Shown: one piece after another, positions 8,041 through 63,998 of the stretch
Position numbering within the stretch: position 1 is the stretch's first letter
Layout: each line of letters opens with the position of its first letter
NCBI GenBank assembly: GCA_004764695.1
Contig: SMSO01000025.1
Span: 3,472,001-3,536,000, forward strand
Origin: Schizochytrium sp. TIO01
Taxonomy: Eukaryota > Protista > Bigyra: Labyrinthulomycetes
Length of the DNA stretch: 64,000 nucleotides
Direction of reading: 5' to 3'
Translations under genes and position numbers: made by a program
Notes under the pieces: generated by a model
What the model saw: only the letters and a program-made list of their open reading frames with translations
The model's database searches: none
Told to the model about the DNA's origin: nothing

Positions 8041-8973
8041 ATGCTTCCGGCGGCAAGTGAGGACGCATGGGCAGCATGGTGGGCCGAGCCTCGTGCGCCG
8101 CCGGTTACGGTTCTTCTCATGTGTGTGCTGGTGCTTGTGAGCGGCCTCTTTAACGTGAAGAACGCCTCGGCCGATGTGGTCTCATGCAACTACAAGGACG
8201 TCGTGCAGCGTCGCGAGTTCTGGCGAGTCTTCGCTGCTCCTCTCGCCCACAAGGAACCTTCGCACCTTTTGGTATCCCTTTTGCTCTTATGGGACTCTCG
8301 CGATGTTGAGCAGTGGATTGGTCCTTATGCCTACGCTCGTCTAGTTTTCCACCTTGTACTTTTAATCGCAAGCCTTCATCTCGGCTACGTGCATTTCGAC
8401 GCGTCCAGGCACCGCGGCGTACGCCCAAACCAAACTTGGTCTTGGCACGGCATGTCTGCGGTCATATTTGCTTTGCTCATGGCTAGGTTCGTCTTGCCTT
8501 ACCTTGACGACAACGCTCAGATCAGTATGGTGGGTTTCATCTTAGTCCCTGCACCCTGCAGCTCTGCTCTTGTTGTCATGCTCTATTCCACCGTGGCGCA
8601 GAGGTCTGTGGCTATGGTTCACGCAATTGGTACTATCGCAGGCACCCTGTATGTCATAGGTGCTCTTGATTGGGTTACGCCGTACCTCACATTTTGCGCA
8701 TTCCAGTGGTGCTGCGTAGGTCTGCTCGCAGGCAAGGGCTTCCCACCGACCTTCGTTTCGGATGAGGTTGTAGCACAGCGTCGCGTGGAGGATGAATTTG
8801 CAGCACAAGCTCGTCAACGGAGACAGCAAGAGGGAGGTAGTGACGACGGATCAAATGGGAGAGGCAATGGTAATGACAGCAATAGATTTAACAGAAATAG
8901 CAACAGGAATAATAACGACGTCGAAGCGGACCTCGAAGCGGGTGAGGGACTAGCTTCAGGGAATAGCAATAGT

Positions 8974-9004
<31 letters not shown>

Positions 9005-9174
9005 GTGTATCTCTAGATGAAAATGAATTAGCCTACTTATTGGACATGCGCATCGATATCCCGCCGCGACTGCGTCCTGGGGCTCGCACAAACAGCCATA
9101 GCGGCAGTAGTGGTAGCAGACAGAGTAGCAACAGGACTTCCAGCAGCTTACAAGAAATCAACTCCCAGACCTAG
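8041..9174 (+). CDS. Rhomboid-family intramembrane serine protease (RHBDD1/plant RBL-like) with N/S-rich C-terminal tail
   Basis: 377-aa ORF. It has PPVT before TM1, a WR motif (EFWRVF), HxxxxH, catalytic GxS (HGMSAVIF), catalytic HxxGxxxG (VHAIGTIAG), several hydrophobic helices and a poly-N tail from (AAC)n. Confidence 0.85.
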
Positions 9175-10584
9175 CTGGAACCTCTTCTGCTGGTCCCGAG
9201 AGTTCGCACGTAACACAAACGAGTAGTTCGCCTCAATGCGTCCTACCGCCGTTGGGAATACAATTCCAGCTCCTACCGACGCCCTCATTCCGTACACAAG
9301 CGATCTCACCGAGGTCTCCCACGCACACAAATTACCCGCATTCGCGTACACATGGCACCTCATTCCCGCCGCATTGAGCGTCGCATGCGGAAACGGCATC
9401 ATCAAATCTGCTCCAAGCTTCCATGTAACGTCTCCTCCGAGCGAATCTCCTCCAAGGGCACCAGGTCTTTTCGGTGACGTTCTCGGCCCTGCTCCTTTGT
9501 GATTGAATCCACGCAGATCCAGCGGACCTCCAAGCCAGAATCGGTCACAAATATGCGTGCTCTCACCAACTCCTGGCAGTTTGTCAGCCTCCGCTGCTCG
9601 AGCTTTTGCGAGAGGGCAAAGAACTCCAGCCTGAAAGGTGAGCCCGAGCGCGACTCCAGGCAAGACATCGGCTAGAATGGGCAGGAACTGCTGCACCTTG
9701 AGCTCTCCCTTTGCAAAGTGGGCGTCACCACCAAGACCCGCAAGCTCTGTCCTGAGTTGCAACAATGAGCCTCGCGAAGGACCAAACGCATTATCGCGTT
9801 TGTCGTTCGTGAAAGTGTAGAAAACGCTGTTCTTCAAGCTTGGCTTCGCCTGTGCCAGAATTAGCCCAGAAGCTGCGAATTCGAACTGGTTTCCGGCACT
9901 GCGCACAGGCATAATATCACGCCAGAAACACCCCGCACCGACCTCGTGGCGGCCACTGTTATGTCTGAGAACTGCCTGGGCTCCACGCACGCGCTCCTCG
10001 TACGAGCTGTAGACCGCGCGACTGACAGTGCTGTGCGAAGCTGACGCTTCAAGTTCTGCGTTGAGGCCTCTAAATCGAGGTTTGTGGACCTCGACGCGAG
10101 CGGAAGCGCTGCTCTTGGTACCGTAGGACCAAGCGGCGTTGACTTTCTCCGTGAATCCCAAAGGATTGTTCAACGAGAGTGCTGTCTCCACACCGCCCTC
10201 AGTACCAGAGCCCTGCACGTAGGTCTCGGCCTTGAGCTGCACCATGCGCTTCTCCCGCACACGCACAGTCACGTCAGTCAGCTCAGAATCACTGTCACGA
10301 TCGCGCTTTCGTCCGCCGGACTTTCCAGCATTCTTAGCAACATCGCAGTACACCTCTACAAACTCGAAGGAGTCCACCTCCTTGAGAGACTTGAGCGCCT
10401 TCATGATGCCTGTGCTCACCTCGCGCACGGTGCGGCCACGACGAGCCTCAGAGAGCTCGTGCTCAACAACGCTACGACGCGTACGGGAGAGTCCAACAAT
10501 GTTCACGCGGCGGATTCGCAAAGGCTTGGAGAAGATGGGATCATCCATGGGCACGTAGCCACCGTCGTCGTCGCGGCCTGCCAT
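9148..10584 (-). CDS. SAM50: Mitochondrial outer-membrane beta-barrel assembly protein Sam50 (Omp85/BamA family)
   Basis: 478-aa ORF. It has an N-terminal POTRA (IRRVNIVGLSRTRRSVVEHEL...VTVRVREK), the Omp85 lid-loop motif FWLGGPLDLRGF, GDSLGGD, GRIEANY, and a C-terminal beta-signal FQLGLGVDFL. Confidence 0.93.
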   Translation of the reverse strand: MAGRDDDGGYVPMDDPIFSKPLRIRRVNIVGLSRTRRSVVEHELSEARRGRTVREVSTGIMKALKSLKEVDSFEFVEVYCDVAKNAGKSGGRKRDRDSDSELTDVTVRVREKRMVQLKAETYVQGSGTEGGVETALSLNNPLGFTEKVNAAWSYGTKSSASARVEVHKPRFRGLNAELEASASHSTVSRAVYSSYEERVRGAQAVLRHNSGRHEVGAGCFWRDIMPVRSAGNQFEFAASGLILAQAKPSLKNSVFYTFTNDKRDNAFGPSRGSLLQLRTELAGLGGDAHFAKGELKVQQFLPILADVLPGVALGLTFQAGVLCPLAKARAAEADKLPGVGESTHICDRFWLGGPLDLRGFNHKGAGPRTSPKRPGALGGDSLGGDVTWKLGADLMMPFPHATLNAAGMRCHVYANAGNLCAWETSVRSLVYGMRASVGAGIVFPTAVGRIEANYSFVLRANSRDQQKRFQLGLGVDFL

Positions 10585-15950: not shown

Positions 15951-17027
15951 ATGACCACAGTGACCAACACATTGCAAGGCTTCGTGCATCATTTTGCAGG
16001 AACTGATCTAGAGACCCTTGGCGTGCCTCCTGAAATCATTTGCAATGTCAAAGGTATCATCTTCGCTAACCGTATCATGCCTGGCCGTGTTACTCATAAC
16101 GTGCATGGCGGCATTTTCTCCTGCTTAGACGAGGAGTCAGGAAAGTGGACCTACCCAGTGGCGCTACAATTTCTGTCCGGATTGGTTACCTCTTGGTCTG
16201 CCTATGACAGAGTTGAGCTTCTTGTGCTGATTACAGATCCTGAGGTCTGTCAATTGCTCAAATCGCTCGGCCAAATCGGTTTTGGCGACCACTCTGCACA
16301 CAAAATCGAAAACGGCATCGCTCTTCGATCAGACCGGTTTCTTACTAGCACTTATGAGTCTGCTAAGAAGAACCCAGACTTTGGAAAGGCTTCTTACGCC
16401 TACCATATGGGTCACAAGGTTTTGCATGAAGCTGAGGTGAAGGACATCATCTGGCAGTTCCGCAGCTCCTCAAATGAAAAATTTTATGGCACACGCAACG
16501 GATCCTTGCACAACATTGCAAAGTTGCACGCACTCACCGAAGAGGATAAGTCTGATGTGGCAATCAAGTCAATCCTTACTCGCTGGCCCACCCGAAACCA
16601 TGAGCTTGCTGACAAGTACATTTCGGTGCTGCAAGCAATGATGCATCCTATTGCAAACCCCTCTGGTAAAGAATATGCTGGTGTTCCTTACCATACAACA
16701 TCTACTTCTTCAGCACCCCCGCCTCCTCCGCGTCCTTCTATGGAAACTCGCGATGACTTTGCTCTTGGAGGATTTGGAGGGGCACCAGCTGAGTATCCGA
16801 TGCCAGTGTCCCGTTCACGCGCTTCGACATGGGCGCACGCAGGACCACAGCCAACCTCCACATGGGGTGGAAGCAGTAGTAGCACTAGCAGTGGCTATGA
16901 TAGCTATCAAGAACAGGATAACGATTCTGTGCAGCATAAAATCCCTGCCCCCGTAACCGAATCTCCTGCGGAGGATGAAGTTAAGAAGGTACAGGTCAGT
17001 CGTCAATCATCATTCGAGTTCAACTGA
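15951..17027 (+). CDS. Divergent SYLF/Ysc84 (SH3YL1-like) domain protein with Pro/Ser-rich tail
   Basis: 358-aa ORF. Landmarks are collinear with Ysc84/SH3YL1: VPPEIICNVKGIIF ~ IPPxVLxxAKGLAI; GKWTYPVAL ~ GTWSAPSAI; ELLVLITDPEV ~ DFVFILNxxEA; SYAY ~ VFAY; RSSSNEKFYG ~ RREANRKFYG. The Gly-rich motifs are eroded, no SH3 domain is seen, and the tail contains PPPPPRP. Confidence 0.7.
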   Translation: MTTVTNTLQGFVHHFAGTDLETLGVPPEIICNVKGIIFANRIMPGRVTHNVHGGIFSCLDEESGKWTYPVALQFLSGLVTSWSAYDRVELLVLITDPEVCQLLKSLGQIGFGDHSAHKIENGIALRSDRFLTSTYESAKKNPDFGKASYAYHMGHKVLHEAEVKDIIWQFRSSSNEKFYGTRNGSLHNIAKLHALTEEDKSDVAIKSILTRWPTRNHELADKYISVLQAMMHPIANPSGKEYAGVPYHTTSTSSAPPPPPRPSMETRDDFALGGFGGAPAEYPMPVSRSRASTWAHAGPQPTSTWGGSSSSTSSGYDSYQEQDNDSVQHKIPAPVTESPAEDEVKKVQVSRQSSFEFN

Positions 17028-18869: not shown

Positions 18870-21800
18870 ATGAGTTATGTAGGGTCGCACATTTCGGGGC
18901 GCAACCAAAATGGATATGGTGGCGGGGTATGGCAAGAACACGTTGACCCGCGAAGCGGTTTGACATTCTACCATAACGTAGTAAATGGCATGAGTGTGTG
19001 GAAATTACCTGAAGATCGTTGGCACAAAGCTCGAGACCTGGAGTCGGATCGATTATACTATTTTAACCTCTATCGTCATCAAAGCACTTACGCAGAACCA
19101 ATTGGATATGTTGACGAAGACTTTCAAAAGGTTCAGGTGCTGCCTTACAACCGAGCTGCCCTCGGTATGAGCGGCGAACGCAAAGATAATGTCGGCTTTA
19201 TCCCTGCTTTTGACCCCAGCAGAAACTCTACGTTCTGGCACTCATCTGGGCAAACGGTGTGGCGAAGACCTCGAGGTGCTCAGTACAGCCTGGATCAACT
19301 ACGACCTTCCCAAGAGTACGAGCGAATGGAGCATGCTGCCCGGCAGCTCCAGAGTCGCATTCACGATGTCTCTGATGAGATTTCTAGGCTAGAAATGATT
19401 GAGACACAGATTGAGGAAACTGCAGACGCGCGTTCGAGACGTCTTGCTCGTCTCCGTGGTCAAAGAAGTGAGTCTGAAGCTATGGAAAGACTTACACTTC
19501 GTGAAAAGGGAGTTACACGTTTTCTTGAAACCTCCTTTGGTCACGTAGCACTTCGCAGCTCCTTTCGTGTTAACGTACCAACCGTTGACTCCTTTCTAAA
19601 GTCGGTGCCCATCTTCCATAATCTGGACGAAGAGCAGTTTGAGTTGGTACGGAAATCGTTACGTAAACAAACCTTCGTTCCTAATGAGGTTATTGTGCGG
19701 CAAGATACCAAGGGCGATTTATTCTATCTTATTATTGAAGGTAAGGTCAGAGTTTACGTACAAGGTGCGTGGACCGAGGATCAGGGATTACTACCCGAGG
19801 ATAATGCATTCGGCAAGCTCGTCAATGAGTTGATTCCTGGAGACTTCTTTGGTGAAAAGGCTCTCCTTGAAGACAAAATGCGCACTGCAACAGTTCTTGC
19901 TGCAACTCACGTTGCAACTTACACACTATCTCGGGATGTCTTTTGCAAGGTTATCAAGCCGGATGAGCTCATGGACACTTCCAACACACAATTGTCGCAT
20001 ATGAGCCTCGAGGTTGCAAGTTTTACAAAGCACGTGGGAAATTTCGATGTTTTGCTCTCGTTGAAGCGCCGAGCAAATACTGAACGTGAACGTCGTGTAG
20101 CAGAGGCACTAATGCTTCTAATGACCGCATTTAGCCCTGAGCTGAACGTTGTAGACACTGTTGCACGGATGCGGAAGACTTTGTTTCAGATTTTCAATTG
20201 TGAGCGTGTCTCTCTGTACACTGTGGATTGGGAAAAGCGCCAACTGCAAATGCAATTCGGGCAGGATCTAGAGACGACATTTACTTTGGATATTGGGGAG
20301 GGCATTGCCGGGCACTGTGCCGCGATGAATAAAATTGTCAATGTACCGCATGTACATAAGAATGAGCATTTCTATGGGGAAGTAGAGCCTGCTAGTTCTG
20401 GTTTTGTAACACGGAATGTACTATGCTGTCCTGTTTGCACGGATGATGGTACAGTGATTACTGTGATCGAGCTTTTAAACAAACGTGGCGGTGCTCCCTT
20501 CTCAGAGGAAGATCAAGATGTCATTGCTTCGGTAAGCGAACAAATGAGTGCAACTCTGGCACAAAAGCGTGCCGAGCAGCTGAATGATTTCTCTCTTGTG
20601 CACTACTTGCCAATTTGGCAAATTGATGAGCCTCTCAAGATCAAATTGAATCGTGTTTTGGGAACAAGTCTGCCGGGCCATGTACTGTCGGACTCCTTTA
20701 TTGTCGCCACTTCTATATACTACGCTGGCCAGCCTCTGGCACCAACAAAGTATTTACAATGCACTGCAGAGCGTCTCATGCCATACATGGTTGTGCCGTT
20801 TGAGACAACTGTAACCCTGGACATCACCCTTTCAAACCTTCCGCGTGCTGCACGTGTCATCTTTAACGTGTACTACTCACCTAAGACTGAGGAAACCGCA
20901 GATTCAGATCTGATCAGTGCTATTATTGATGAACAGGCAAAGCGAGATGCGAAGCGGGAGATGGAGGAAGAAGCTGCCATGGAAAAAACTCTGAGCAGCC
21001 ATCACAGACAAAGCTCCACACGCCAACATCCTACTGAGCGAGACAGAATTCGTAAAGAGAAGCAAACACGTCGCAATATAGAGATGGAGCGCTTAGTAAA
21101 AGAGGGCCTAGCGACTCCGATAGGATGGGCAGGTTTGACTCTTTTGGACTTTGACCAAGTCATGCGCAGTGGACACATGCGTCTCAAGCTCTTTCGTGGG
21201 GAGGCAGGACCAGATATGGCTGCTGTAGCAACCTTGCTAAGTAATAATACTCGGGCAAAGGATGCAGTTGACTTTCTCGAAATTACCTTGCCTGCTAGAA
21301 GAAAACCAGTTGTATACAGTGATCACGTGTCTGACGCAGAAAAGCTTGATGCAGATGAAACAGCTGCTCCTCAACGCTCCAACCTTTATAAATTAATGCG
21401 TGCAGAGCTGGAGAAGTTCATTCATAGCGACCCTCTTCGTCCATTGAGCAATGATGAAAAACTTCTTGTTTTACAGACTCGTCGTGAACTTATGGATGAT
21501 CCTGCTGCGTTGCCAAAGTTTTTGCAAGCCATTGACTGGTCAAAGCGGTCTCAGACTCAACTCGCTTATAACATGCTTAACCTCTGGGCAATGCCGGACC
21601 CAGTCGTTGCGTTACAATTGTTAGACTTCAAACATCCAGATCCTAAGATTCGCGCCCTTGCTGTTGCAGCGCTTGAATCCATGTCAGATCTTGATCTTGA
21701 AGAGATCATGCTGCAACTTGTCCAAGTTCTTAAGTTCGAACGCTTCGTGGACTCTGCTTTATCTCGTTTCTTGCTCCGGCGCGCGCTGCGCGCACCTGCT

Positions 21801-22967
21801 GTGATTGGGCATCGTTTGTTTTGGTTGCTCAAGGCCGAGATGCATATTCCAGAGATTGCGGATCGCTATGGTGCCTTACTAGACACCTACTTGCGACACT
21901 GCCGAGCGAGACAAGAACTGGGTCATCAACAATTTGTTAATAGCAAATTTGAGTCAATCGCTGCGGCAGTCAAACTTGAAAAGCCACAGAAACGATCTGC
22001 TTTGCTAAGACAACAACTGGAGTCTGTAACATTGCCTGATGAGTTCCAGCTCCCATTGTCTCCTCACCTGTTCTTCCGAGGCCTGAACGTAGAAAAATGC
22101 CGTGTGATGAATTCTAAGAAAGCACCTTTGTTCCTAGAGTGTTTACAAGCTCGCCCCGGTGCACCGCCGGTCTCGGTGCTATATAAGTCTGGCGATGATT
22201 TGCGGCAAGACCAGCTGACATTGCAACTTTTGCGTACAATGGACAGACTCTGGAAAACTGAAGGGCTTGATTTGCGGTTATCCCTGTATAGTGTCGTGTC
22301 AACAGGCAACGAACGCGGAATGATCCAGATTGTTCCTGATGCGGAAACCTTAGCCCGAATTACAGCTGGGCGCGGAGGCGGCAAGTTTAGCAAAGCTGTG
22401 AAGGTTTTTGATGACAAGAAACTAAAACGGTATTTGCAGAACTCTGGTTATGCGCGCAAGGTTACGGAGCAAAACTTCAAGTGTTCTTGTGCTGGCTACT
22501 GTGTAGCTACCTATGTCTTGGGCATCGGTGATCGTCATGCGGATAACATCATGCTAACACGGGATGGCAAGCTATTTCATATTGACTTTGGTCATTTTTT
22601 GGGCAACTTTAAGTCAAAGATGGGTATCAAGCGTGAGCGGGGTCCTTTCTTATTTTCCAATGCCATGGCAACCGTTCTAGGGCCACAAGATCGCCCCTTG
22701 TTTAAGGAGTTTGAGGATCTGTGCGGTCATGCATACAATATTTTACGTCGCAATGCCAACCTACTGATTACATTGTTTTCATTAATGCTTTCCAGTGGTA
22801 TGCCTGAGTTAACTCGGGAGTCTGACATTGACTGGGTTCGGGATCGTTTAATGCTTGACGCTACCGAGGAGGAAGCTGCTGAGCGTTTTCGTGATCTTAT
22901 TCAAGAAGCCTTGTCAACATGGACAGCAACGCTTAACGACTTTGCACATGTCATGCGTCGGAATTAG
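18870..22967 (+). CDS. Class-I-like phosphoinositide 3-kinase with N-terminal WW x3, coiled coil, cNMP-binding and GAF domains
   Basis: 1365-aa ORF. Kinase motifs: CRVMNSKKAPL, KSGDDLRQDQLTLQ, GIGDRHADNIM, HIDFGHFLGNFKSKMGIKRERGPF. Helical domain: SDPLRPLS...ALPKFLQAIDW. PI3K-C2: LSNLPRAARVIFNVY...PIGW. cNMP: GDLFYLIIEGKV, GDFFGEKALLEDKMRTATV. GAF: CERVSLY, GIAGHCA, LLNKRGGAPFSEED. WW: WQEHVDPRSGLTFYHN..SVWKLP. Confidence 0.95.
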   Translation: MSYVGSHISGRNQNGYGGGVWQEHVDPRSGLTFYHNVVNGMSVWKLPEDRWHKARDLESDRLYYFNLYRHQSTYAEPIGYVDEDFQKVQVLPYNRAALGMSGERKDNVGFIPAFDPSRNSTFWHSSGQTVWRRPRGAQYSLDQLRPSQEYERMEHAARQLQSRIHDVSDEISRLEMIETQIEETADARSRRLARLRGQRSESEAMERLTLREKGVTRFLETSFGHVALRSSFRVNVPTVDSFLKSVPIFHNLDEEQFELVRKSLRKQTFVPNEVIVRQDTKGDLFYLIIEGKVRVYVQGAWTEDQGLLPEDNAFGKLVNELIPGDFFGEKALLEDKMRTATVLAATHVATYTLSRDVFCKVIKPDELMDTSNTQLSHMSLEVASFTKHVGNFDVLLSLKRRANTERERRVAEALMLLMTAFSPELNVVDTVARMRKTLFQIFNCERVSLYTVDWEKRQLQMQFGQDLETTFTLDIGEGIAGHCAAMNKIVNVPHVHKNEHFYGEVEPASSGFVTRNVLCCPVCTDDGTVITVIELLNKRGGAPFSEEDQDVIASVSEQMSATLAQKRAEQLNDFSLVHYLPIWQIDEPLKIKLNRVLGTSLPGHVLSDSFIVATSIYYAGQPLAPTKYLQCTAERLMPYMVVPFETTVTLDITLSNLPRAARVIFNVYYSPKTEETADSDLISAIIDEQAKRDAKREMEEEAAMEKTLSSHHRQSSTRQHPTERDRIRKEKQTRRNIEMERLVKEGLATPIGWAGLTLLDFDQVMRSGHMRLKLFRGEAGPDMAAVATLLSNNTRAKDAVDFLEITLPARRKPVVYSDHVSDAEKLDADETAAPQRSNLYKLMRAELEKFIHSDPLRPLSNDEKLLVLQTRRELMDDPAALPKFLQAIDWSKRSQTQLAYNMLNLWAMPDPVVALQLLDFKHPDPKIRALAVAALESMSDLDLEEIMLQLVQVLKFERFVDSALSRFLLRRALRAPAVIGHRLFWLLKAEMHIPEIADRYGALLDTYLRHCRARQELGHQQFVNSKFESIAAAVKLEKPQKRSALLRQQLESVTLPDEFQLPLSPHLFFRGLNVEKCRVMNSKKAPLFLECLQARPGAPPVSVLYKSGDDLRQDQLTLQLLRTMDRLWKTEGLDLRLSLYSVVSTGNERGMIQIVPDAETLARITAGRGGGKFSKAVKVFDDKKLKRYLQNSGYARKVTEQNFKCSCAGYCVATYVLGIGDRHADNIMLTRDGKLFHIDFGHFLGNFKSKMGIKRERGPFLFSNAMATVLGPQDRPLFKEFEDLCGHAYNILRRNANLLITLFSLMLSSGMPELTRESDIDWVRDRLMLDATEEEAAERFRDLIQEALSTWTATLNDFAHVMRRN

Positions 22968-23699
22968 ATTGAAGAGAGAAAAATCAATGGATACAACGGT
23001 AGACTGTATGCTTTTGATGCCCTTTGTTTTTGTTTAATTAAGTTCAAGTTGTTTCCTTTTGATCTTCTTGTGTCTACTCCGGTGATTTCCCAGGATTTAT
23101 AATGCAGAAAACAGCATCCACTTGGTTTCAACATTATGTAAGCAGTGAGTAAAGAATATTGACGGGCTGGGCGATCGAGCAACTCTTGTATGAGAACTTC
23201 AAAGAAGGATACTTGACAAGAAGAAAGAAGGAATTTCAAGCTGTTTGGGAGCGGTGACAAAAACGTTATAAAGCTTATAAAACATGAATGTAACATAATA
23301 TTTAAAGGGAATACATTGGGGGATAACAATTCATATCACATAACTGAACCATTTTTGGTTATAGTTACGGTTGTCCGAGAAGCGCTTTCAAGGACTGGAC
23401 ACAATCCATGAAAGAAGGAATGTGGTCAAAATGCACACACGACAATAGAAAATATGAACAACGATGATCAAAAGCAGGTGTGAAATAAGGATGGTGTGCT
23501 CTTGTTGCTGCTAGTGGCTATGAGATGCAAACGTGGAGCTATGCAAACATAAACTTGTGTGAAAAAGAATAATGTCAAGAAGTGATGACAATTAATCAAT
23601 ACAGAGGAAAGTCCTGACCCCAGCATTTAATGCAGGCAACTATAATACGTATCAGAGACTGCGTGGGAGCCCTTGGCGCAGTGATTAGGAAGAGTATAA

Positions 23700-25067
23700 T
23701 CACTGATTTTGTTGTCCATTTGAGTTCTGCGTAAATTTTTGCATAATGTACTGGAGGAGTTCAGTGTTAGGCTGGGAGCCAGGCGAGAGCTGGGCAGGGG
23801 CAGTTGATGCGTAGGTTGTAGCGAAGTTTACAGGAACAACCTGCGAAGAGGAGGCAACAGTCAAACGCGGGCTTTGTAGTTTATCATTGACTGATAACTC
23901 CAGGGAACCAGGGTTCTTGTAAAATGTAGGGGGTACCTTGTTTACGTTTGTGGTTGTGGTAACATCAACAGCCTCTACGCCGCTGCAACTCTTCACGTCA
24001 TCCTCCTCAACTTCGCCATAGCTGTGTTGCACTAAGCAAGCCCCCTTACGTGGCATGAAAAGCTCACAAAAGTTGGGAAGGCCGATCGCACCACCACGCG
24101 TAAAGGAGGCACGATAAATGGCCGCTGCAAATGATGCCTCAATATTGCAATTGAAGGAGTGGTGGATGAAGCGTGAGGTGCGATTCTTGCGAGGAAAGTA
24201 CTTTGAGCCTTCCTTTTTAACGTGCATTGGCTTGTCCTTCTTATCTGTGATTTGTACAAGCTGTGCAATCGTAAAGTTCACCGCGCGGAGGTCATCGCGA
24301 AGCTTGGCGACGACACGAGCACAGAGTTCCTCCTTGCTCTTTTCGTCGAGTGGGTTGCGCATGTGCTCACGGATCTTAGGTGCCCAGAAAGGGTAGTGAA
24401 CTTTGCGAATAGGGAGTTCGTCGAGGTCGAAAAGCACTTCTGCATCATCATTGACACTCGGCGGAGACGCAGGTGTCCTAGTGCTGGGTCCGTTGCTGTT
24501 TGCAGCGGTGCTTCGAATGTACTCTGCTTCTGCAACTGGCGTGGGCGGGGCAGTGTCATTAGGCGAAGACGGAGTGGAGATGGGGAATGATGCGTTGGAC
24601 ATGGGACTTGCCATGGGGATTGTGGAGACGAGGGAGCCCGAAGAAATACACAGCTTCTTGTTGTTCTCGTGAACTTGCTGTTCCGTCTTGAAAGCTACTT
24701 CTGAAAAGCGACGCTTCTGCTGCTGTGTGTTGGTGCGGACTTGCTCTGCCCAGGCCTGGGTGGACCAGTTTGCCATGGGCTCGGTTTTGATGTTAGTGAA
24801 GGAAAGCCGACGCTCCTGCTGTGGTTTGTTGTGCTCCTGGTTGAAGTTAAAGGTGGCAGATTGGTATTGCTGTTGCTGTTGCTGATGTTGTTGTTGTTGT
24901 TGGCGAAAAGTCTGCAAGAATGCAGCATCAAGCATGCTCTGCATTGCTTGTGCCTGATGAGGTTGGAACTGATGTGTGGAGAGTCTTCTGTTTGCGGCGT
25001 GGAATATAGGCGATGGTGGACTCCAGTTAGGGGAGTTGGCTGACTCATTTGCGTTGTTTGCCGGCAT
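23700..25067 (-). CDS. Uncharacterised Q/S/P-rich protein, probable transcriptional regulator with a central basic globular domain
   Basis: 455-aa ORF with poly-Q, many S/T-P sites, three RRxS motifs, psiKxE motifs and a ~135-aa basic/aromatic core (aa ~211-346) that I cannot assign to a family. Coding status is well supported; function is inferred. Confidence 0.7.
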   Translation of the reverse strand: MPANNANESANSPNWSPPSPIFHAANRRLSTHQFQPHQAQAMQSMLDAAFLQTFRQQQQQHQQQQQQYQSATFNFNQEHNKPQQERRLSFTNIKTEPMANWSTQAWAEQVRTNTQQQKRRFSEVAFKTEQQVHENNKKLCISSGSLVSTIPMASPMSNASFPISTPSSPNDTAPPTPVAEAEYIRSTAANSNGPSTRTPASPPSVNDDAEVLFDLDELPIRKVHYPFWAPKIREHMRNPLDEKSKEELCARVVAKLRDDLRAVNFTIAQLVQITDKKDKPMHVKKEGSKYFPRKNRTSRFIHHSFNCNIEASFAAAIYRASFTRGGAIGLPNFCELFMPRKGACLVQHSYGEVEEDDVKSCSGVEAVDVTTTTNVNKVPPTFYKNPGSLELSVNDKLQSPRLTVASSSQVVPVNFATTYASTAPAQLSPGSQPNTELLQYIMQKFTQNSNGQQNQ

Positions 25068-61322: not shown

Positions 61323-63998
61323 TTACTCGGCAAGAGAGGATTCATCTGCATCGAAAAACGCATCTGTTTGCTCAACAACTGTTTGAAATACGTTTTCAAG
61401 CCCAGTTGTGCAGAGAGCATAAGATCGAATAAGTAAAGATGCGTGGTTTGTCTCCAAGAATTCGAACATATCAGCCACAGAAGCAGTGGCATTTACGATA
61501 CTAAATTGTAGATAAGATTCATGTCTGTCTTCCAGAGCAACCACTTCTTCACCACCCCAAGCTTTGGCCAGGTGCTGCTGTAAGCGTGTTACTGCATCCT
61601 CCTGCAACCACCAGCGCTGAAATTCGAGCCAGCTCACACGAGCAATCGATGGCAGATTGAGCATAAAGCCCACCGTACTAGACGCTGCCTCGCCCTTTGG
61701 TTGCAATGCTTGAAATCGTAAAGCATTGCCTAAGAATTCGCACACTTCATAGAGATCAGTTTGGTTTACATAACCATCCGCTACACAAGGTGGCGTTGGC
61801 AGACGAGCACTTTCGTCGACACGCGGGTTAGCCAAAGTTACTTCCAAAGATACAGCAGATCCGTAGAGTTTCTTCAAATGAGTGGCTGTACCTATTGCTC
61901 GCAAGCGACCCCCAATTAAAATGCCGATGCGGGTACTTAACGTTTCCACTTCAGGCATACTGTGGCTTACCAACATCACTGCTGACTGGGTCTGTCTTGT
62001 CGTATCACGAATCACATCCCACATAAACCGTTGAGACAGTGCATCGACTCCGCTCGTAGGTTCATCCAGAATGATTACTTCGGGAGACCCAAGCATTGCA
62101 ATTGCTGCTGAAAGTTTACGCTTATTTCCTCCGGACAGGTGCTTTGCAATCACATTTTTGAACTTCATAAGTTGCATTCGCTCAATACTTGTGCGCACAG
62201 CTTTATGTACATCAGACAGTCCACGAATCTGCGCGTACATGGTCAAATGTTCCTGAACAGTCAGAAGATCATACAGAGCATCGTGTTGAGGGCAGTAGCC
62301 AAGAGATCTTCGCGCTTTAGTAAGTTGAGTTCGCACACTGGAACCTAAAATTGTTGCTGTACCAGCTGTGGCGGTTTCTCCACCTGTTAGAATGCGGATG
62401 GTTGTACTCTTACCTGCGCCATTCACACCGAGATAGCCAAATACTTCACCTCGACGAATACCTAGCCATAGGTCATCAACAGCTACCTTCTGATCATATC
62501 GTTTCGTAAGTCCAAGAATTTGAACGGCATCATCCTTTGTGGAATTGACGCGAGCACGCTCTACCTGGACATCTAAAGATCCTTGAACCATAAGCCTGTT
62601 CTCTAATACCTCCATACGCGTAGGAACATGGTTTTCGGGCTTTGGATGAGACATCTCATCGTCCTTCAATGACGCGGAGCTATCACTAACTTCAACTTCG
62701 ATTTCATCAAATTCTTTGGAAAAAGTAGCAGGCACAATCTCAGTACCTCCTGTTCCTACGCTATGTCTTGGAGAAGATCCTAAGGCTGCTACTGTTTGTG
62801 CAGGCGCTGCATTTGCAGTGAGACTGCTGTTGTTAGCAATCACTTCAGTAGAAACAGGAGGTTCCTCCGCTACTAGGGCAGCTGCAGCAGCGTTAACATT
62901 CTTGAGATGCTTTTTTGCAATGGCGTCCGACCGAAGACAGGAAACACTCGAAGGCAACTCACGAAACGTAACATACAGCCAGCAGACAACACCGACACCT
63001 AGTAGATAGCCTACACTAATAAGGGTATTATCAAATGATGGCTCGTATCTGCCTTCAATACTTGTCATGTTTGTCACATTCGCCAGAGCCAAGGTAACGG
63101 CTGTCTGAGACGCATCCGAAACCGGTTCTGGAAATAGGTTTGTGCAAAGCCCAAAGGTTGCCCAGGGATTGTTTGATGCACAATCGGTGACAACCTCAGT
63201 TTGTAACCGGAGTAAGCCATCAGCAAACGCGTATCCCGGGAAGAATGAGAAGCAATACCGCAGATAGTCATCTGCAAGTGTTACAGAGGATATCGAACCA
63301 ATATCCAGATGAACCACCTTCAAGACATAAACTAACACAGAAAGTGCCCCACCGGTAATGATTTGAAATAAAACCATCACAACCAAAGCATCTGCATGAT
63401 TCCGGAAGGAGAAACTCATCGCGTATGCCAAAGGCACGCATACAAATACAAATGCAAGAGTCAGAACGGTTGCTTGCTGAATCACTGTTGTTGCATATGT
63501 AAGCGAGCTCAAACTTGCGTACATAAGCACGAAAGGCAAAGAAACAACAGGTAGGACAGTAGAAAACTGATCAAAAACATAATGAGCTCCCCAATATGTA
63601 GAACGATATACACCATTGACAAGTTGTTGAAATTTAGTTTGCCGGTCAGCTTCAGTCTCAAGCACGGCAAATGCGATCACTGAACCTGGAGGAAAGAGAA
63701 ATCCCAAAAACAGAACTAAGGTACGTACAAATGCATTGACATACTCTTGAATCACACCGAGAGAGCGATAATTACAATACTCATTGTAATTGAGTTTTCC
63801 AGTATTGCTAAAGAGATAGATAGGGTCTAGCGGCGTAGCAGATTGACAAAGATAGAAGGGCGACTTATGGTTTCGAGGATTGCAACATTCACTTGCATCA
63901 CAAAGCCATGGCAATGCATAACAGTAACTATATGTATGTACATAACAATTGAGCTGCTCCCGCTGTGCATCTTGAACCTCGACACATTGCGGAAGTTC
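61323..63998 (-). CDS. ABCA-subfamily transporter, 3' part (ECD/TMD + NBD + regulatory domain); 5' end lies beyond the window
   Basis: The frame stays open to the window edge (ELPQCVEVQ...YALPWLC). Motifs: ABCA-type ETEADRQTKFQQLVNGVYRSTYW, Walker A GVNGAGKST, Q-loop GYCPQHD, signature LSGGNKRKLS, Walker B IILDEPTSGVD, H-loop VSHSM, HLKKLYG and terminal TGLENVF. Confidence 0.93.
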   Translation of the reverse strand, partial: ELPQCVEVQDAQREQLNCYVHTYSYCYALPWLCDASECCNPRNHKSPFYLCQSATPLDPIYLFSNTGKLNYNEYCNYRSLGVIQEYVNAFVRTLVLFLGFLFPPGSVIAFAVLETEADRQTKFQQLVNGVYRSTYWGAHYVFDQFSTVLPVVSLPFVLMYASLSSLTYATTVIQQATVLTLAFVFVCVPLAYAMSFSFRNHADALVVMVLFQIITGGALSVLVYVLKVVHLDIGSISSVTLADDYLRYCFSFFPGYAFADGLLRLQTEVVTDCASNNPWATFGLCTNLFPEPVSDASQTAVTLALANVTNMTSIEGRYEPSFDNTLISVGYLLGVGVVCWLYVTFRELPSSVSCLRSDAIAKKHLKNVNAAAAALVAEEPPVSTEVIANNSSLTANAAPAQTVAALGSSPRHSVGTGGTEIVPATFSKEFDEIEVEVSDSSASLKDDEMSHPKPENHVPTRMEVLENRLMVQGSLDVQVERARVNSTKDDAVQILGLTKRYDQKVAVDDLWLGIRRGEVFGYLGVNGAGKSTTIRILTGGETATAGTATILGSSVRTQLTKARRSLGYCPQHDALYDLLTVQEHLTMYAQIRGLSDVHKAVRTSIERMQLMKFKNVIAKHLSGGNKRKLSAAIAMLGSPEVIILDEPTSGVDALSQRFMWDVIRDTTRQTQSAVMLVSHSMPEVETLSTRIGILIGGRLRAIGTATHLKKLYGSAVSLEVTLANPRVDESARLPTPPCVADGYVNQTDLYEVCEFLGNALRFQALQPKGEAASSTVGFMLNLPSIARVSWLEFQRWWLQEDAVTRLQQHLAKAWGGEEVVALEDRHESYLQFSIVNATASVADMFEFLETNHASLLIRSYALCTTGLENVFQTVVEQTDAFFDADESSLAE

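What the first reader, a model, noticed from the sequence alone, without database searches (positions are those of the whole stretch)
18870..22967. PI3-kinase fused to two cyclic-nucleotide sensors (cNMP-binding domain + GAF): candidate cGMP-gated PIP3 kinase
Seen: one uninterrupted ORF with WWx3, coiled coil, CNBD (~19590-19955), GAF (~20140-20550), then C2, helical and kinase domains. I see no Ras-binding or adaptor-binding domain. Established: the basic activation loop KSKMGIKRER resembles class I p110 (KSKFGIKRER), which uses PI(4,5)P2. In CNBD phosphate-binding cassettes FGE..AL....R-T-A is PKG/cGMP-type, whereas R-A-A is PKA/cAMP-type. NKxnFxxxD(E), here NKRGGAPFSEEDQ, marks PDE-type nucleotide-binding GAFs. 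Inference: the sensors occupy the place of the ABD/RBD, so cyclic nucleotide could switch PIP3 synthesis directly. I know of no such architecture among characterised animal, fungal, plant or Dictyostelium PI3Ks, but could not check databases.
Basis: partly seen in the sequence, partly recalled or inferred. Interest (0 to 1): 0.9.

Follow-up and report, generated by a model that had tools for sequence, protein, structure and literature searches.

The report
PI3-kinase fused to cyclic-nucleotide sensors
A thraustochytrid (marine protist) gene encodes a class-I-like PI3-kinase in which a cyclic-nucleotide-binding domain and a PDE-type GAF domain replace the usual Ras- and adaptor-binding domains; the design is conserved across stramenopiles and uncharacterised, and it suggests that cAMP or cGMP switches 3-phosphoinositide synthesis directly.

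Summary
Window 18870-22967 (+) is one uninterrupted 1365-aa ORF. Pfam finds WW, cNMP_binding, GAF, PI3K_C2, PI3Ka and the PI3/PI4-kinase domain, and no Ras- or adaptor-binding domain.

The gene is real:
- 22 of 23 strain differences inside the ORF are synonymous.
- Single unspliced contigs in two transcriptome-sized runs span the whole ORF.
- Full-length orthologues exist.

The catalytic half is closest to class I p110 and keeps the basic activation loop. The CNBD has an intact phosphate-binding cassette. The GAF matches only cNMP-binding GAFs in PDB.

The "cGMP-type" call is not supported. The Thr after the cassette Arg varies among orthologues, and the PKG guanine-reading β5 Arg is Asn here.

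The architecture is not unique. It defines an RBD-free clade of stramenopile PI3Ks (Hondaea, Thraustochytrium, Mucochytrium, Cafeteria, Triparma, Paraphysomonas and many metagenome proteins). Databases carry only automatic names, and seven literature searches found no description.

The genome's only other non-Vps34 PI3K carries four CNBDs.

Most likely this is a cyclic-nucleotide-gated class-I-like PI3K. The ligand, the direction of control and the lipid product are untested.

The parts
18870..22967 (+). Complete intronless gene: 1365 aa plus stop
   Evidence: Orthologues of 1336-1410 aa share the domain order. 22 of 23 strain differences are synonymous.
18930..19010 (+). WW domain 1 (aa 21-47)
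   Evidence: Pfam PF00397, 3.5e-8.
19020..19271 (+). Two further WW-like repeats (aa 51-77 and aa 110-134)
   Evidence: Seen by eye and conserved in alignment A1. They are below the Pfam threshold.
19317..19514 (+). Predicted long helix or coiled coil (aa ~150-215)
   Evidence: AF2 helix at aa 167-212, pLDDT about 60-75. A weak bZIP-like hit sits at the same place in P0180.
19602..19994 (+). Cyclic-nucleotide-binding domain (aa ~245-375), with a β4-β5 insertion
   Evidence: Pfam PF00027, 2.3e-14. PDB sequence hits: Plasmodium PKG 1e-29, PKG I 1.6e-20, PKA R 3e-20. Foldseek: PKG Iβ CNB-B 4qxk, TM 0.84, rmsd 2.5 Å, 35% identity.
19839..19895 (+). Phosphate-binding cassette GDFFGEKALLEDKMRTATV (G328, E329, R338, T339, A340)
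   Evidence: G328, E329, R338 and A340 are invariant in 8 labyrinthulomycete orthologues. In the 30-sequence family alignment R is kept in 22 and G in 30.
19995..20156 (+). Helical connector between CNBD and GAF (aa 376-429)
   Evidence: The most conserved N-terminal segment: 98% identity to Hondaea and 83% to P0003. AF2 predicts long helices.
20157..20564 (+). GAF domain of the PDE/CyaB type (aa 430-565)
   Evidence: Pfam PF01590, 3e-10. All 20 PDB sequence hits are cNMP-binding-type GAFs or close kin: CyaB2 8.6e-23, PDE6, PDE2A, PDE10A, PDE5.
20478..20516 (+). NKFDE-type motif NKRGGAPFSEEDQ (N537, K538, F544, D548, Q549)
   Evidence: N537, F544 and D548 are invariant in close orthologues. 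Across 30 family members: F in 30, D in 26, N in 24.
20622..21359 (+). PI3K C2 domain (aa ~585-830) with a charged, poorly conserved insert (aa 669-745; nt 20874-21104)
   Evidence: Pfam PF00792, 1.6e-10. The insert is 13-45% identical among orthologues and has low pLDDT.
21390..21911 (+). PI3K helical (PIK) domain (aa 841-1014)
   Evidence: Pfam PF00613, 2e-50.
22077..22964 (+). Lipid-kinase domain (aa ~1070-1365). The ATP-binding Lys (K1106), the catalytic loop DRHxDN (aa 1221-1226) and the DFG motif (aa 1239-1241) are intact.
   Evidence: Pfam PF00454, 3.6e-55. VIA-align against p110γ gives Z 34.8, rmsd 3.1 Å, 672 residues aligned.
22584..22655 (+). Activation loop DFGHFLGNFKSKMGIKRERGPFLF, with both basic boxes (KSK and KRER)
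   Evidence: Conserved through the whole clade. Aligns to p110γ GNYKSFLGINKERVPF, and the top 60 PDB hits are all class I.
22968..23062 (+). Probable 3' UTR. Contigs of two transcriptome-sized runs end at 23062.
   Evidence: table 8: X3 and X7 end at 23062 and leave 23063-23270 uncovered. RNA status of these runs is a guess.

Best explanation
This is a genuine single-exon gene of a thraustochytrid close to Hondaea. It encodes a class-I-like phosphoinositide 3-kinase. Its C2-helical-kinase core is preceded by WW repeats, a long helix, one cyclic-nucleotide-binding domain, a highly conserved helical connector and one PDE/CyaB-type GAF domain. The usual adaptor-binding and Ras-binding domains are absent.

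Shown here:
- the architecture;
- its conservation under purifying selection;
- intact catalytic and activation-loop residues;
- an intact CNBD phosphate-binding cassette;
- a GAF domain that resembles only cNMP-binding GAFs;
- membership of an RBD-free, stramenopile-wide PI3K clade.

Inferred:
- cAMP and/or cGMP binds the GAF domain, and in this lineage also the CNBD.
- Ligand binding repositions the connector helices and the GAF-C2 junction, as cNMP does in PDE2/5, CyaB and PKG.
- This switches 3-phosphorylation of PI(4,5)P2 (or PI4P/PI) on or off.
- The WW repeats and the helix supply localisation and/or dimerisation.

The organism would then have a one-protein relay from cyclic nucleotide to 3-phosphoinositide. 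Which nucleotide acts, whether it activates or inhibits, and which lipid is made remain open.
For: A real, single gene:
- Searches show one uninterrupted ORF.
- 22 of 23 strain SNPs are synonymous, 13 of them in codons 43-641.
- Single joint-free contigs cover the ORF in X3 and X7, end 95 nt after the stop, and the next contig has a 7-fold different depth in X3.
- The CNBD (86%), connector (98%) and GAF (89%) are as conserved against Hondaea as the helical (82%) and kinase (93%) domains.

Catalytic half:
- Pfam domains.
- PDB sequence hits to p110β/γ/δ/α at 1e-127 to 1e-107.
- Foldseek 1e-47 to p110α/δ.
- VIA-align Z 34.8 for p110γ, about 28 for PI3KC2α and 28-29.5 for Vps34.
- Activation loop GNFKSKxGxKRE[RK] conserved in the clade and aligned to class I loops.

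Sensors:
- CNBD cassette G-E...R-x-A intact.
- CNBD fold close to PKG Iβ CNB-B and PKA RIα CNB-A.
- GAF hits only cNMP-type GAFs.
- The segment GIAGH...FY..V[ED]..S[ST]GF.TRN.LC.P...E..NK..G..FS..D aligns position by position with PDE2A GAF-B.
- D/E506, S/T510 and T514 are kept in 22-28 of 30 family members.

Model:
- The AF2 model of aa 166-1365 has pLDDT 81.3 and pTM 0.81.

Same cassette elsewhere:
- CNBD-GAF cassettes drive HD-GYP, SpoIIE/PP2C and cyclase outputs in other proteins.

Cellular context:
- The genome has at least 14 cyclase-domain loci, at least 11 PDE loci and 5 PTEN_C2 loci.
- The only other non-Vps34 PI3K in the genome carries 4 CNBDs.
Against: - No binding or activity data exist.
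- Part of the family has lost the cassette Arg: the Triparma group, P0184, P0186 and P0150. The P0180-P0187 subgroup has a degenerate GAF with large inserts. Oomycete members have no detectable sensor domain. Cyclic-nucleotide sensing is therefore not obligatory for the clade.
- The NKFDE motif has Q for the final E in this protein.
- The co-folding test of the CNBD against the catalytic core gave no answer.
- Class I versus class II placement was not resolved with animal reference sequences.
- RNA evidence rests on contigs from runs whose RNA status is a guess.
Confidence: 0.55

Rival explanations
1. The CNBD and GAF are ligand-independent. They serve as a scaffold, dimerisation module or autoinhibitory module, and other inputs regulate the kinase, for example WW-domain partners or phosphorylation of the charged C2 insert.
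For: Several clade members have lost the cassette Arg or have a disrupted GAF yet keep the domains. Oomycete members have lost recognisable sensors altogether. From general knowledge, pseudo-CNBDs and non-binding GAF-B domains are common.
Against: In this protein and its labyrinthulomycete orthologues every canonical cassette residue and the PDE2A-like GAF pocket segment are retained. These domains are under purifying selection as strong as that on the kinase domain.
Confidence: 0.2
2. The sensors bind ligand, but the enzyme is not a PIP3 synthase. It would make PI3P or PI(3,4)P2 like class II or III enzymes, or act mainly as a protein kinase.
For: The clade is separate from the RBD-type class-I-like clade. 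Structural Z-scores for class II and III cores are not far below class I: about 28 against 35. No class IA or IB regulatory-subunit interface (ABD) is present.
Against: Best sequence similarity is to class I throughout. Both basic boxes of the activation loop are present and conserved. From my recollection of the literature (Pirola et al. 2001), these boxes are needed for PI(4,5)P2 use. PTEN-type phosphatase domains exist in the genome.
Confidence: 0.2
3. The GAF domain binds a small molecule other than cAMP or cGMP, and only the CNBD, or neither domain, senses cyclic nucleotide.
For: From general knowledge, GAF domains as a superfamily bind many ligands. The final residue of the NKFDE motif is Q here, and position 502 (Tyr in PDE2A) is variable in the family.
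Against: All 20 PDB sequence matches are of the cNMP-binding PDE/CyaB kind or near kin. No bilin, haem or NO-type GAF was matched.
Confidence: 0.1
4. The long ORF is an assembly or annotation artefact, or it is transcribed as two separate units.
For: RNA status of the runs is only a guess, and contigs cannot show transcript starts.
Against: The same uninterrupted ORF appears in 4 independent runs from 4 studies. The architecture is the same in more than 30 proteins from independent genomes and transcriptomes, including MMETSP transcripts. The synonymous-only variation runs continuously across the domain junctions.
Confidence: 0.03

Closest known systems
Class I PI3K catalytic subunits (p110α/β/δ/γ; Dictyostelium PI3K1-3)
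   Same: The C2-helical-kinase core, the catalytic residues and the basic activation loop. Best sequence and structure matches are to these enzymes.
   Different: There is no adaptor-binding domain and no Ras-binding domain. WW repeats, a long helix, a CNBD and a GAF stand in their place. The protein lies in a separate clade from all RBD-bearing PI3Ks sampled.
cGMP-dependent protein kinase (PKG) and the PKA regulatory subunit
   Same: A CNBD of the same subtype (35% identity to PKG Iβ CNB-B, TM 0.84) lies N-terminal to a kinase in one polypeptide, preceded by a helix that could dimerise.
   Different: The output is a lipid kinase of the PI3K fold, not an AGC protein kinase. There is one CNBD, not a tandem. 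The PKG β5 Arg is Asn here.
GAF-regulated PDE2/5/6/10/11 and cyanobacterial cyclases CyaB1/CyaB2
   Same: A GAF with an NKFDE-type motif and a PDE2A-GAF-B-like pocket segment lies N-terminal to the catalytic domain via helical connectors.
   Different: There is a single GAF, not a tandem. It is paired with a CNBD. The output is PI3K instead of cNMP hydrolysis or synthesis.
CNBD-GAF(-GAF) sensor cassettes in front of HD-GYP, SpoIIE/PP2C and class III cyclase domains
   Same: The same CNBD-then-GAF order and detectable sequence similarity over both domains.
   Different: The outputs differ. The source organisms of those proteins are not given in the library searched. No PI3K core is present.
Second PI3K of the same genome (G000:C30; 3×SH3, 4×CNBD, RBD, C2, helical, kinase) and haptophyte-like CNBD+RBD PI3Ks (P0209, P0253)
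   Same: CNBDs are fused upstream of a class-I-like PI3K core.
   Different: These keep the RBD, have no GAF, and lie outside the CNBD-GAF clade. They therefore look like independent fusions.

Membership tests
Class I PI3K catalytic subunit | C2 + helical (PIK) + PI3/PI4-kinase core with intact catalytic residues | tested here: met
   Pfam. Invariant K1106, DRHxDN and DFG. p110γ Z 34.8.
Class I PI3K catalytic subunit | Activation loop with two basic boxes, linked to PI(4,5)P2 use (from my recollection of the literature) | tested here: met
   GNFKSKMGIKRER is conserved in the clade. It aligns to p110γ, and the top 60 PDB hits are all class I.
Class I PI3K catalytic subunit | Ras-binding domain | tested here: not met
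   No PF00794 hit. The genome-wide RBD search hits only the C30 paralogue. The GAF-C2 gap is too short for an RBD.
Class I PI3K catalytic subunit | Adaptor-binding domain (class IA) or p101/p84 interface (class IB) | tested here: not met
   No PI3K_p85B hit. The N-terminus is occupied by WW, helix, CNBD and GAF.
Class I PI3K catalytic subunit | Phylogenetic placement with class I rather than class II or III | tested here: inconclusive
   Rooted on the genome's own Vps34 (checked), the protein falls in a 96%-supported RBD-free clade beside the RBD-type clade that holds Capsaspora, Naegleria and Amoebozoa. No animal class I or II references were available.
Class I PI3K catalytic subunit | Makes PI(3,4,5)P3 from PI(4,5)P2 | not testable with these tools
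   Needs a lipid-kinase assay.
Ligand-competent CNBD (PKA/PKG/Epac type) | β-roll fold with cassette Gly-Glu ... Arg-x-Ala | tested here: met
   Pfam 2.3e-14. Fold match to PKG and PKA CNBs. G328, E329, R338 and A340 are invariant in close orthologues.
cGMP-selective CNBD (PKG type) | Thr/Ser after the cassette Arg plus a guanine-contacting β5 Arg | tested here: inconclusive
   T339 is present here, but the position is T/S/N/A/K/M in the family. The β5 position aligned to the PKG 'LRTL' Arg is Asn319. The role of that Arg is from my recollection of the literature.
cNMP-binding GAF (PDE2/5/6/10/11, CyaB1/2) | GAF fold with the NKFDE motif | tested here: met
   N537, K538, F544 and D548 are present; the final E is Q549. 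All PDB sequence hits are of this kind.
cNMP-binding GAF (PDE2/5/6/10/11, CyaB1/2) | Pocket residues equivalent to the PDE2A GAF-B cGMP contacts | tested here: inconclusive
   The tool alignment pairs I479-A480, Y502, E506, S510, T514 and E534 with PDE2A residues. I recall these as I458, A459, Y481, D485, T488, T492 and E512. That contact list comes from memory and was not checked.
cNMP-binding GAF / CNBD | Actual binding of cAMP or cGMP | not testable with these tools
   Needs ITC, DSF or a crystal structure.

The most novel reading that the evidence does not exclude
Stramenopiles have a PI3K subfamily in which Ras and adaptor input has been replaced by direct cyclic-nucleotide gating through a CNBD-GAF cassette. 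In thraustochytrids both non-Vps34 PI3Ks are cNMP receptors, so cAMP or cGMP is converted into PIP3 by a single polypeptide. This regulatory principle is not known for any characterised PI3K.
Probability: 0.45. Interest if true: 0.85.

Novelty: new variant of a known kind. Interest (0 to 1): 0.72.

Why it matters
All characterised class I PI3Ks are switched on by receptors, Gβγ, Ras-family GTPases or adaptor subunits. A PI3K with built-in cyclic-nucleotide sensors would be a direct, one-protein link between two of the main eukaryotic second-messenger systems.

It would also show how signalling was rewired in a major and little-studied eukaryotic group: stramenopiles, including heterotrophic flagellates, labyrinthulomycetes and ochrophyte algae.

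The hypothesis can be tested directly, and Aurantiochytrium and its relatives are, to my knowledge, transformable. If gating is confirmed, the module could serve as a cNMP-controlled PI3K tool. The fact that the only other non-Vps34 PI3K in the genome carries four CNBDs suggests the coupling is biologically important rather than a one-off fusion.

Tried and rejected
- Co-folding of the CNBD (aa 235-400) with the C2-helical-kinase core (aa 581-1365) gave "no answer", score 0.01. It is not evidence either way.
- Seven literature searches and a look into the Phytophthora kinome paper found no description of a CNBD/GAF-PI3K. This covers only the held open-access library.
- The search of earlier findings returned only an unrelated ABCA note.
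- Read laying offered only contigs, so transcript start, strand and expression level could not be shown. The RNA status of X1, X3 and X7 is a guess.
- No animal class I or II reference sequences could be brought into the tree, so the class I versus class II question was addressed only by PDB similarity and the activation loop.
- The idea that the C30 gene was PI4KIIIα was rejected. It is a second PI3K.
- The idea that the 'RTA' motif marks cGMP specificity was rejected as unconserved.
No spliced model was needed.

Full report
**Observation**

Window 18870-22967 (+) is a single ATG-initiated ORF of 1365 codons. Only ten more in-frame codons lie upstream before a stop. Pfam finds, all above the curated cut-offs:
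- WW, aa 21-47
- cNMP_binding, aa 267-363
- GAF, aa 430-562
- PI3K_C2, aa 608-781
- PI3Ka, aa 841-1014
- PI3_PI4_kinase, aa 1101-1315

There is no Ras-binding or p85-binding domain, and the GAF-to-C2 gap is too short to hide one. Only one of the "three WW" passes Pfam; the other two are WW-like and conserved in orthologues.

**Is it a real, single gene?**

Four public runs from four studies carry the stretch at 99% identity or more. Of the 23 differences inside the ORF, 22 are synonymous, and they are spread from codon 43 to codon 1239.

In two transcriptome-sized runs (about 31-37 Mb of contigs against a 64 Mb genome; RNA status is a guess):
- one joint-free contig covers the whole ORF;
- it ends 95 nt after the stop;
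- 23063-23270 is left uncovered;
- the neighbouring contig has a 7-fold different depth in one run.

This looks like a transcript but is not proof.

Eight labyrinthulomycete proteins of 1308-1521 aa share the architecture. Against the Hondaea orthologue, the CNBD (86%), the CNBD-GAF connector (98%) and the GAF (89%) are as conserved as the helical (82%) and kinase (93%) domains.

**Organism**

The best hit is Hondaea fermentalgiana "Phosphatidylinositol 3-kinase 3", at 79% identity. The window therefore comes from a thraustochytrid. The assembly has 64 Mb in 37 contigs.

**Catalytic half**

- The best PDB sequence matches are p110β (1e-127), γ (1e-118), δ (1e-113) and α (1e-107).
- An AF2 model of aa 166-1365 has pLDDT 81.3 and pTM 0.81.
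- Foldseek matches that model to p110α/δ at 1e-47.
- VIA-align gives Z 34.8 (rmsd 3.1 Å, 672 residues) for p110γ, about 28 for the class II PI3KC2α core and 28-29.5 for Vps34.
- The ATP-binding Lys, DRHxDN and DFG are invariant.
- The activation loop GNFKSKMGIKRER carries both basic boxes, is conserved through the clade and aligns to class I loops; the 60 best PDB hits of that segment are all class I.

PI(4,5)P2 use is therefore plausible but untested.

**CNBD**

- The best PDB sequence hits are Toxoplasma PCR12, Plasmodium PKG, PKG I CNB-B and PKA R subunits.
- In the AF2 model of aa 225-580 (pLDDT 82.3) the CNBD superposes on PKG Iβ CNB-B (TM 0.84, rmsd 2.5 Å, 35% identity) and on PKA RIα CNB-A.
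- The cassette residues G328, E329, R338 and A340 are invariant in close orthologues.
- The residue after the Arg is T, S, N, A, K or M across the family.
- Asn319 occupies the position aligned to the Arg of PKG "LRTL".

A cGMP assignment is therefore not justified.

**GAF**

- All 20 PDB sequence hits are PDE/CyaB-type GAFs or close kin: CyaB2 8.6e-23, PDE6, PDE2A, PDE10A, PDE5.
- An 81-residue stretch aligns with PDE2A GAF-B without large gaps. It includes GIAGH, FY, [ST]GFxTRNxLCxP and E..NK..G..FS..D.
- I recall the aligned PDE2A positions as cGMP contacts. That list is from memory, so it is a lead and not a test.
- D/E506, S/T510 and T514 are kept in 22-28 of 30 family members.
- The only non-synonymous strain variant is S510T, at one of these positions.

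**Distribution and phylogeny**

A HMMER scan of 1.84 billion representative proteins with aa 230-830 found further CNBD-GAF-C2-PI3K proteins at 26-43% identity. A search with the catalytic half gave named members:
- Thraustochytrium sp. LLF1b
- Mucochytrium quahogii
- Cafeteria roenbergensis
- Triparma strigata and T. verrucosa
- Paraphysomonas

Many metagenome proteins also appeared, some auto-named "CRP-like cAMP-binding protein".

The tree used 121 helical-plus-kinase regions (IQ-TREE quick search, SH-aLRT support), rooted on the genome's own Vps34 (checked). In it:
- All CNBD/GAF-bearing, RBD-less PI3Ks form one clade of 57 rows (96% support). The clade also contains the oomycete PI3Ks and no RBD protein.
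- All RBD-bearing PI3Ks sampled, except the own-genome paralogue and its partner P0242, form a second clade (98% support). It includes Capsaspora, Naegleria, Amoebozoa and a haptophyte.

Four rows with poor coverage were left out.

Within the sensor clade:
- the Triparma group, P0184, P0186 and P0150 have lost the cassette Arg;
- the P0180-P0187 subgroup has a disrupted GAF;
- oomycete members show no sensor domains.

The sensors are therefore ancestral to much of the clade but are not universally kept intact.

**Genome context**

- The genome has only four PI3Ka-domain loci: this gene, Vps34, a weak sub-threshold hit, and a 2230-aa gene on C30.
- The C30 gene encodes 3×SH3, 4×CNBD, RBD, C2, helical and kinase domains. 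It has a Hondaea orthologue and contains the only RBD in the genome.
- Both non-Vps34 PI3Ks of this organism therefore carry CNBDs.
- The genome also has at least 14 class III cyclase-domain loci, at least 11 PDE loci and 5 PTEN_C2 loci. Both messenger systems are in place.
- CNBD-GAF cassettes similar to this one precede HD-GYP, SpoIIE/PP2C and cyclase outputs in other proteins. It is a portable sensor module.

**Mechanism**

Most likely, cyclic nucleotide bound to the GAF (and here also to the CNBD) acts through the very conserved helical connector and the short GAF-C2 junction to gate the lipid kinase. This would be analogous to PDE2/5, CyaB and PKG. I put this at about 0.55. The main rivals are ligand-independent pseudo-sensors (0.2), a product other than PIP3 (0.2) and a non-cNMP GAF ligand (0.1). 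The last two overlap partly with the main model.

**Novelty**

The architecture sits in public databases under automatic names. I found no paper describing it or testing it. The scan's earlier notes hold nothing on it. I class it as a new variant of a known kind.

**Limits**

- The co-folding test gave no answer.
- The reads tools gave contigs only.
- No animal class I or II references could be put in the tree.
- Model coordinates could not be inspected.

Noticed in passing
G000:C30:1920256-1926948 (L021:2757-9449, minus strand): A second PI3K of the same genome, about 2230 aa: 3×SH3, 4×cNMP_binding, PI3K_rbd, C2, PI3Ka and kinase. An identical protein (P0297) and a Hondaea orthologue (P0298, 73% identity) exist. 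It lies outside the CNBD-GAF clade on a long branch with P0242, so it looks like an independent fusion of CNBDs to a PI3K.
   Followed up: partly
proteins P0209, P0253, P0211: CNBD+RBD PI3Ks nest in the RBD-type clade next to the haptophyte Calcidiscus. This suggests a further independent gain of CNBDs by PI3Ks.
   Followed up: no
proteins P0237, P0246, P0272, P0273 (oomycetes): PI3Ks of Pythium, Lagenidium and Globisporangium nest inside the CNBD-GAF clade but have about 490-690 N-terminal residues with no Pfam hit. These may be relic sensors. The Lagenidium model also carries a C-terminal phosphatidylserine-synthase domain, which may be a gene-model fusion.
   Followed up: no
window 20397: The only non-synonymous strain difference in the ORF is S510T, seen in run X7. 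It lies at the GAF position that aligns with a Thr of the PDE2A GAF-B pocket segment.
   Followed up: partly
window 1-64000: Gene density is low: only six ORFs of 250 aa or more in 64 kb. GC-poor stretches (0.36-0.40) alternate with GC about 0.5.
   Followed up: no
window 8041-9174 (+) and 9148-10584 (-): A rhomboid-domain ORF and an Omp85-superfamily ORF (2.3e-45) converge, and their ends overlap by 27 nt.
   Followed up: no
window 61323-63914 (-): An ABCA-type transporter piece with ABC2_membrane_3, ABC_tran and the ABCA1 R1 domain.
   Followed up: no
window 15951-17027 (+) and 23700-25067 (-): Both ORFs flanking the PI3K gene (358 and 455 aa) have no Pfam family.
   Followed up: no
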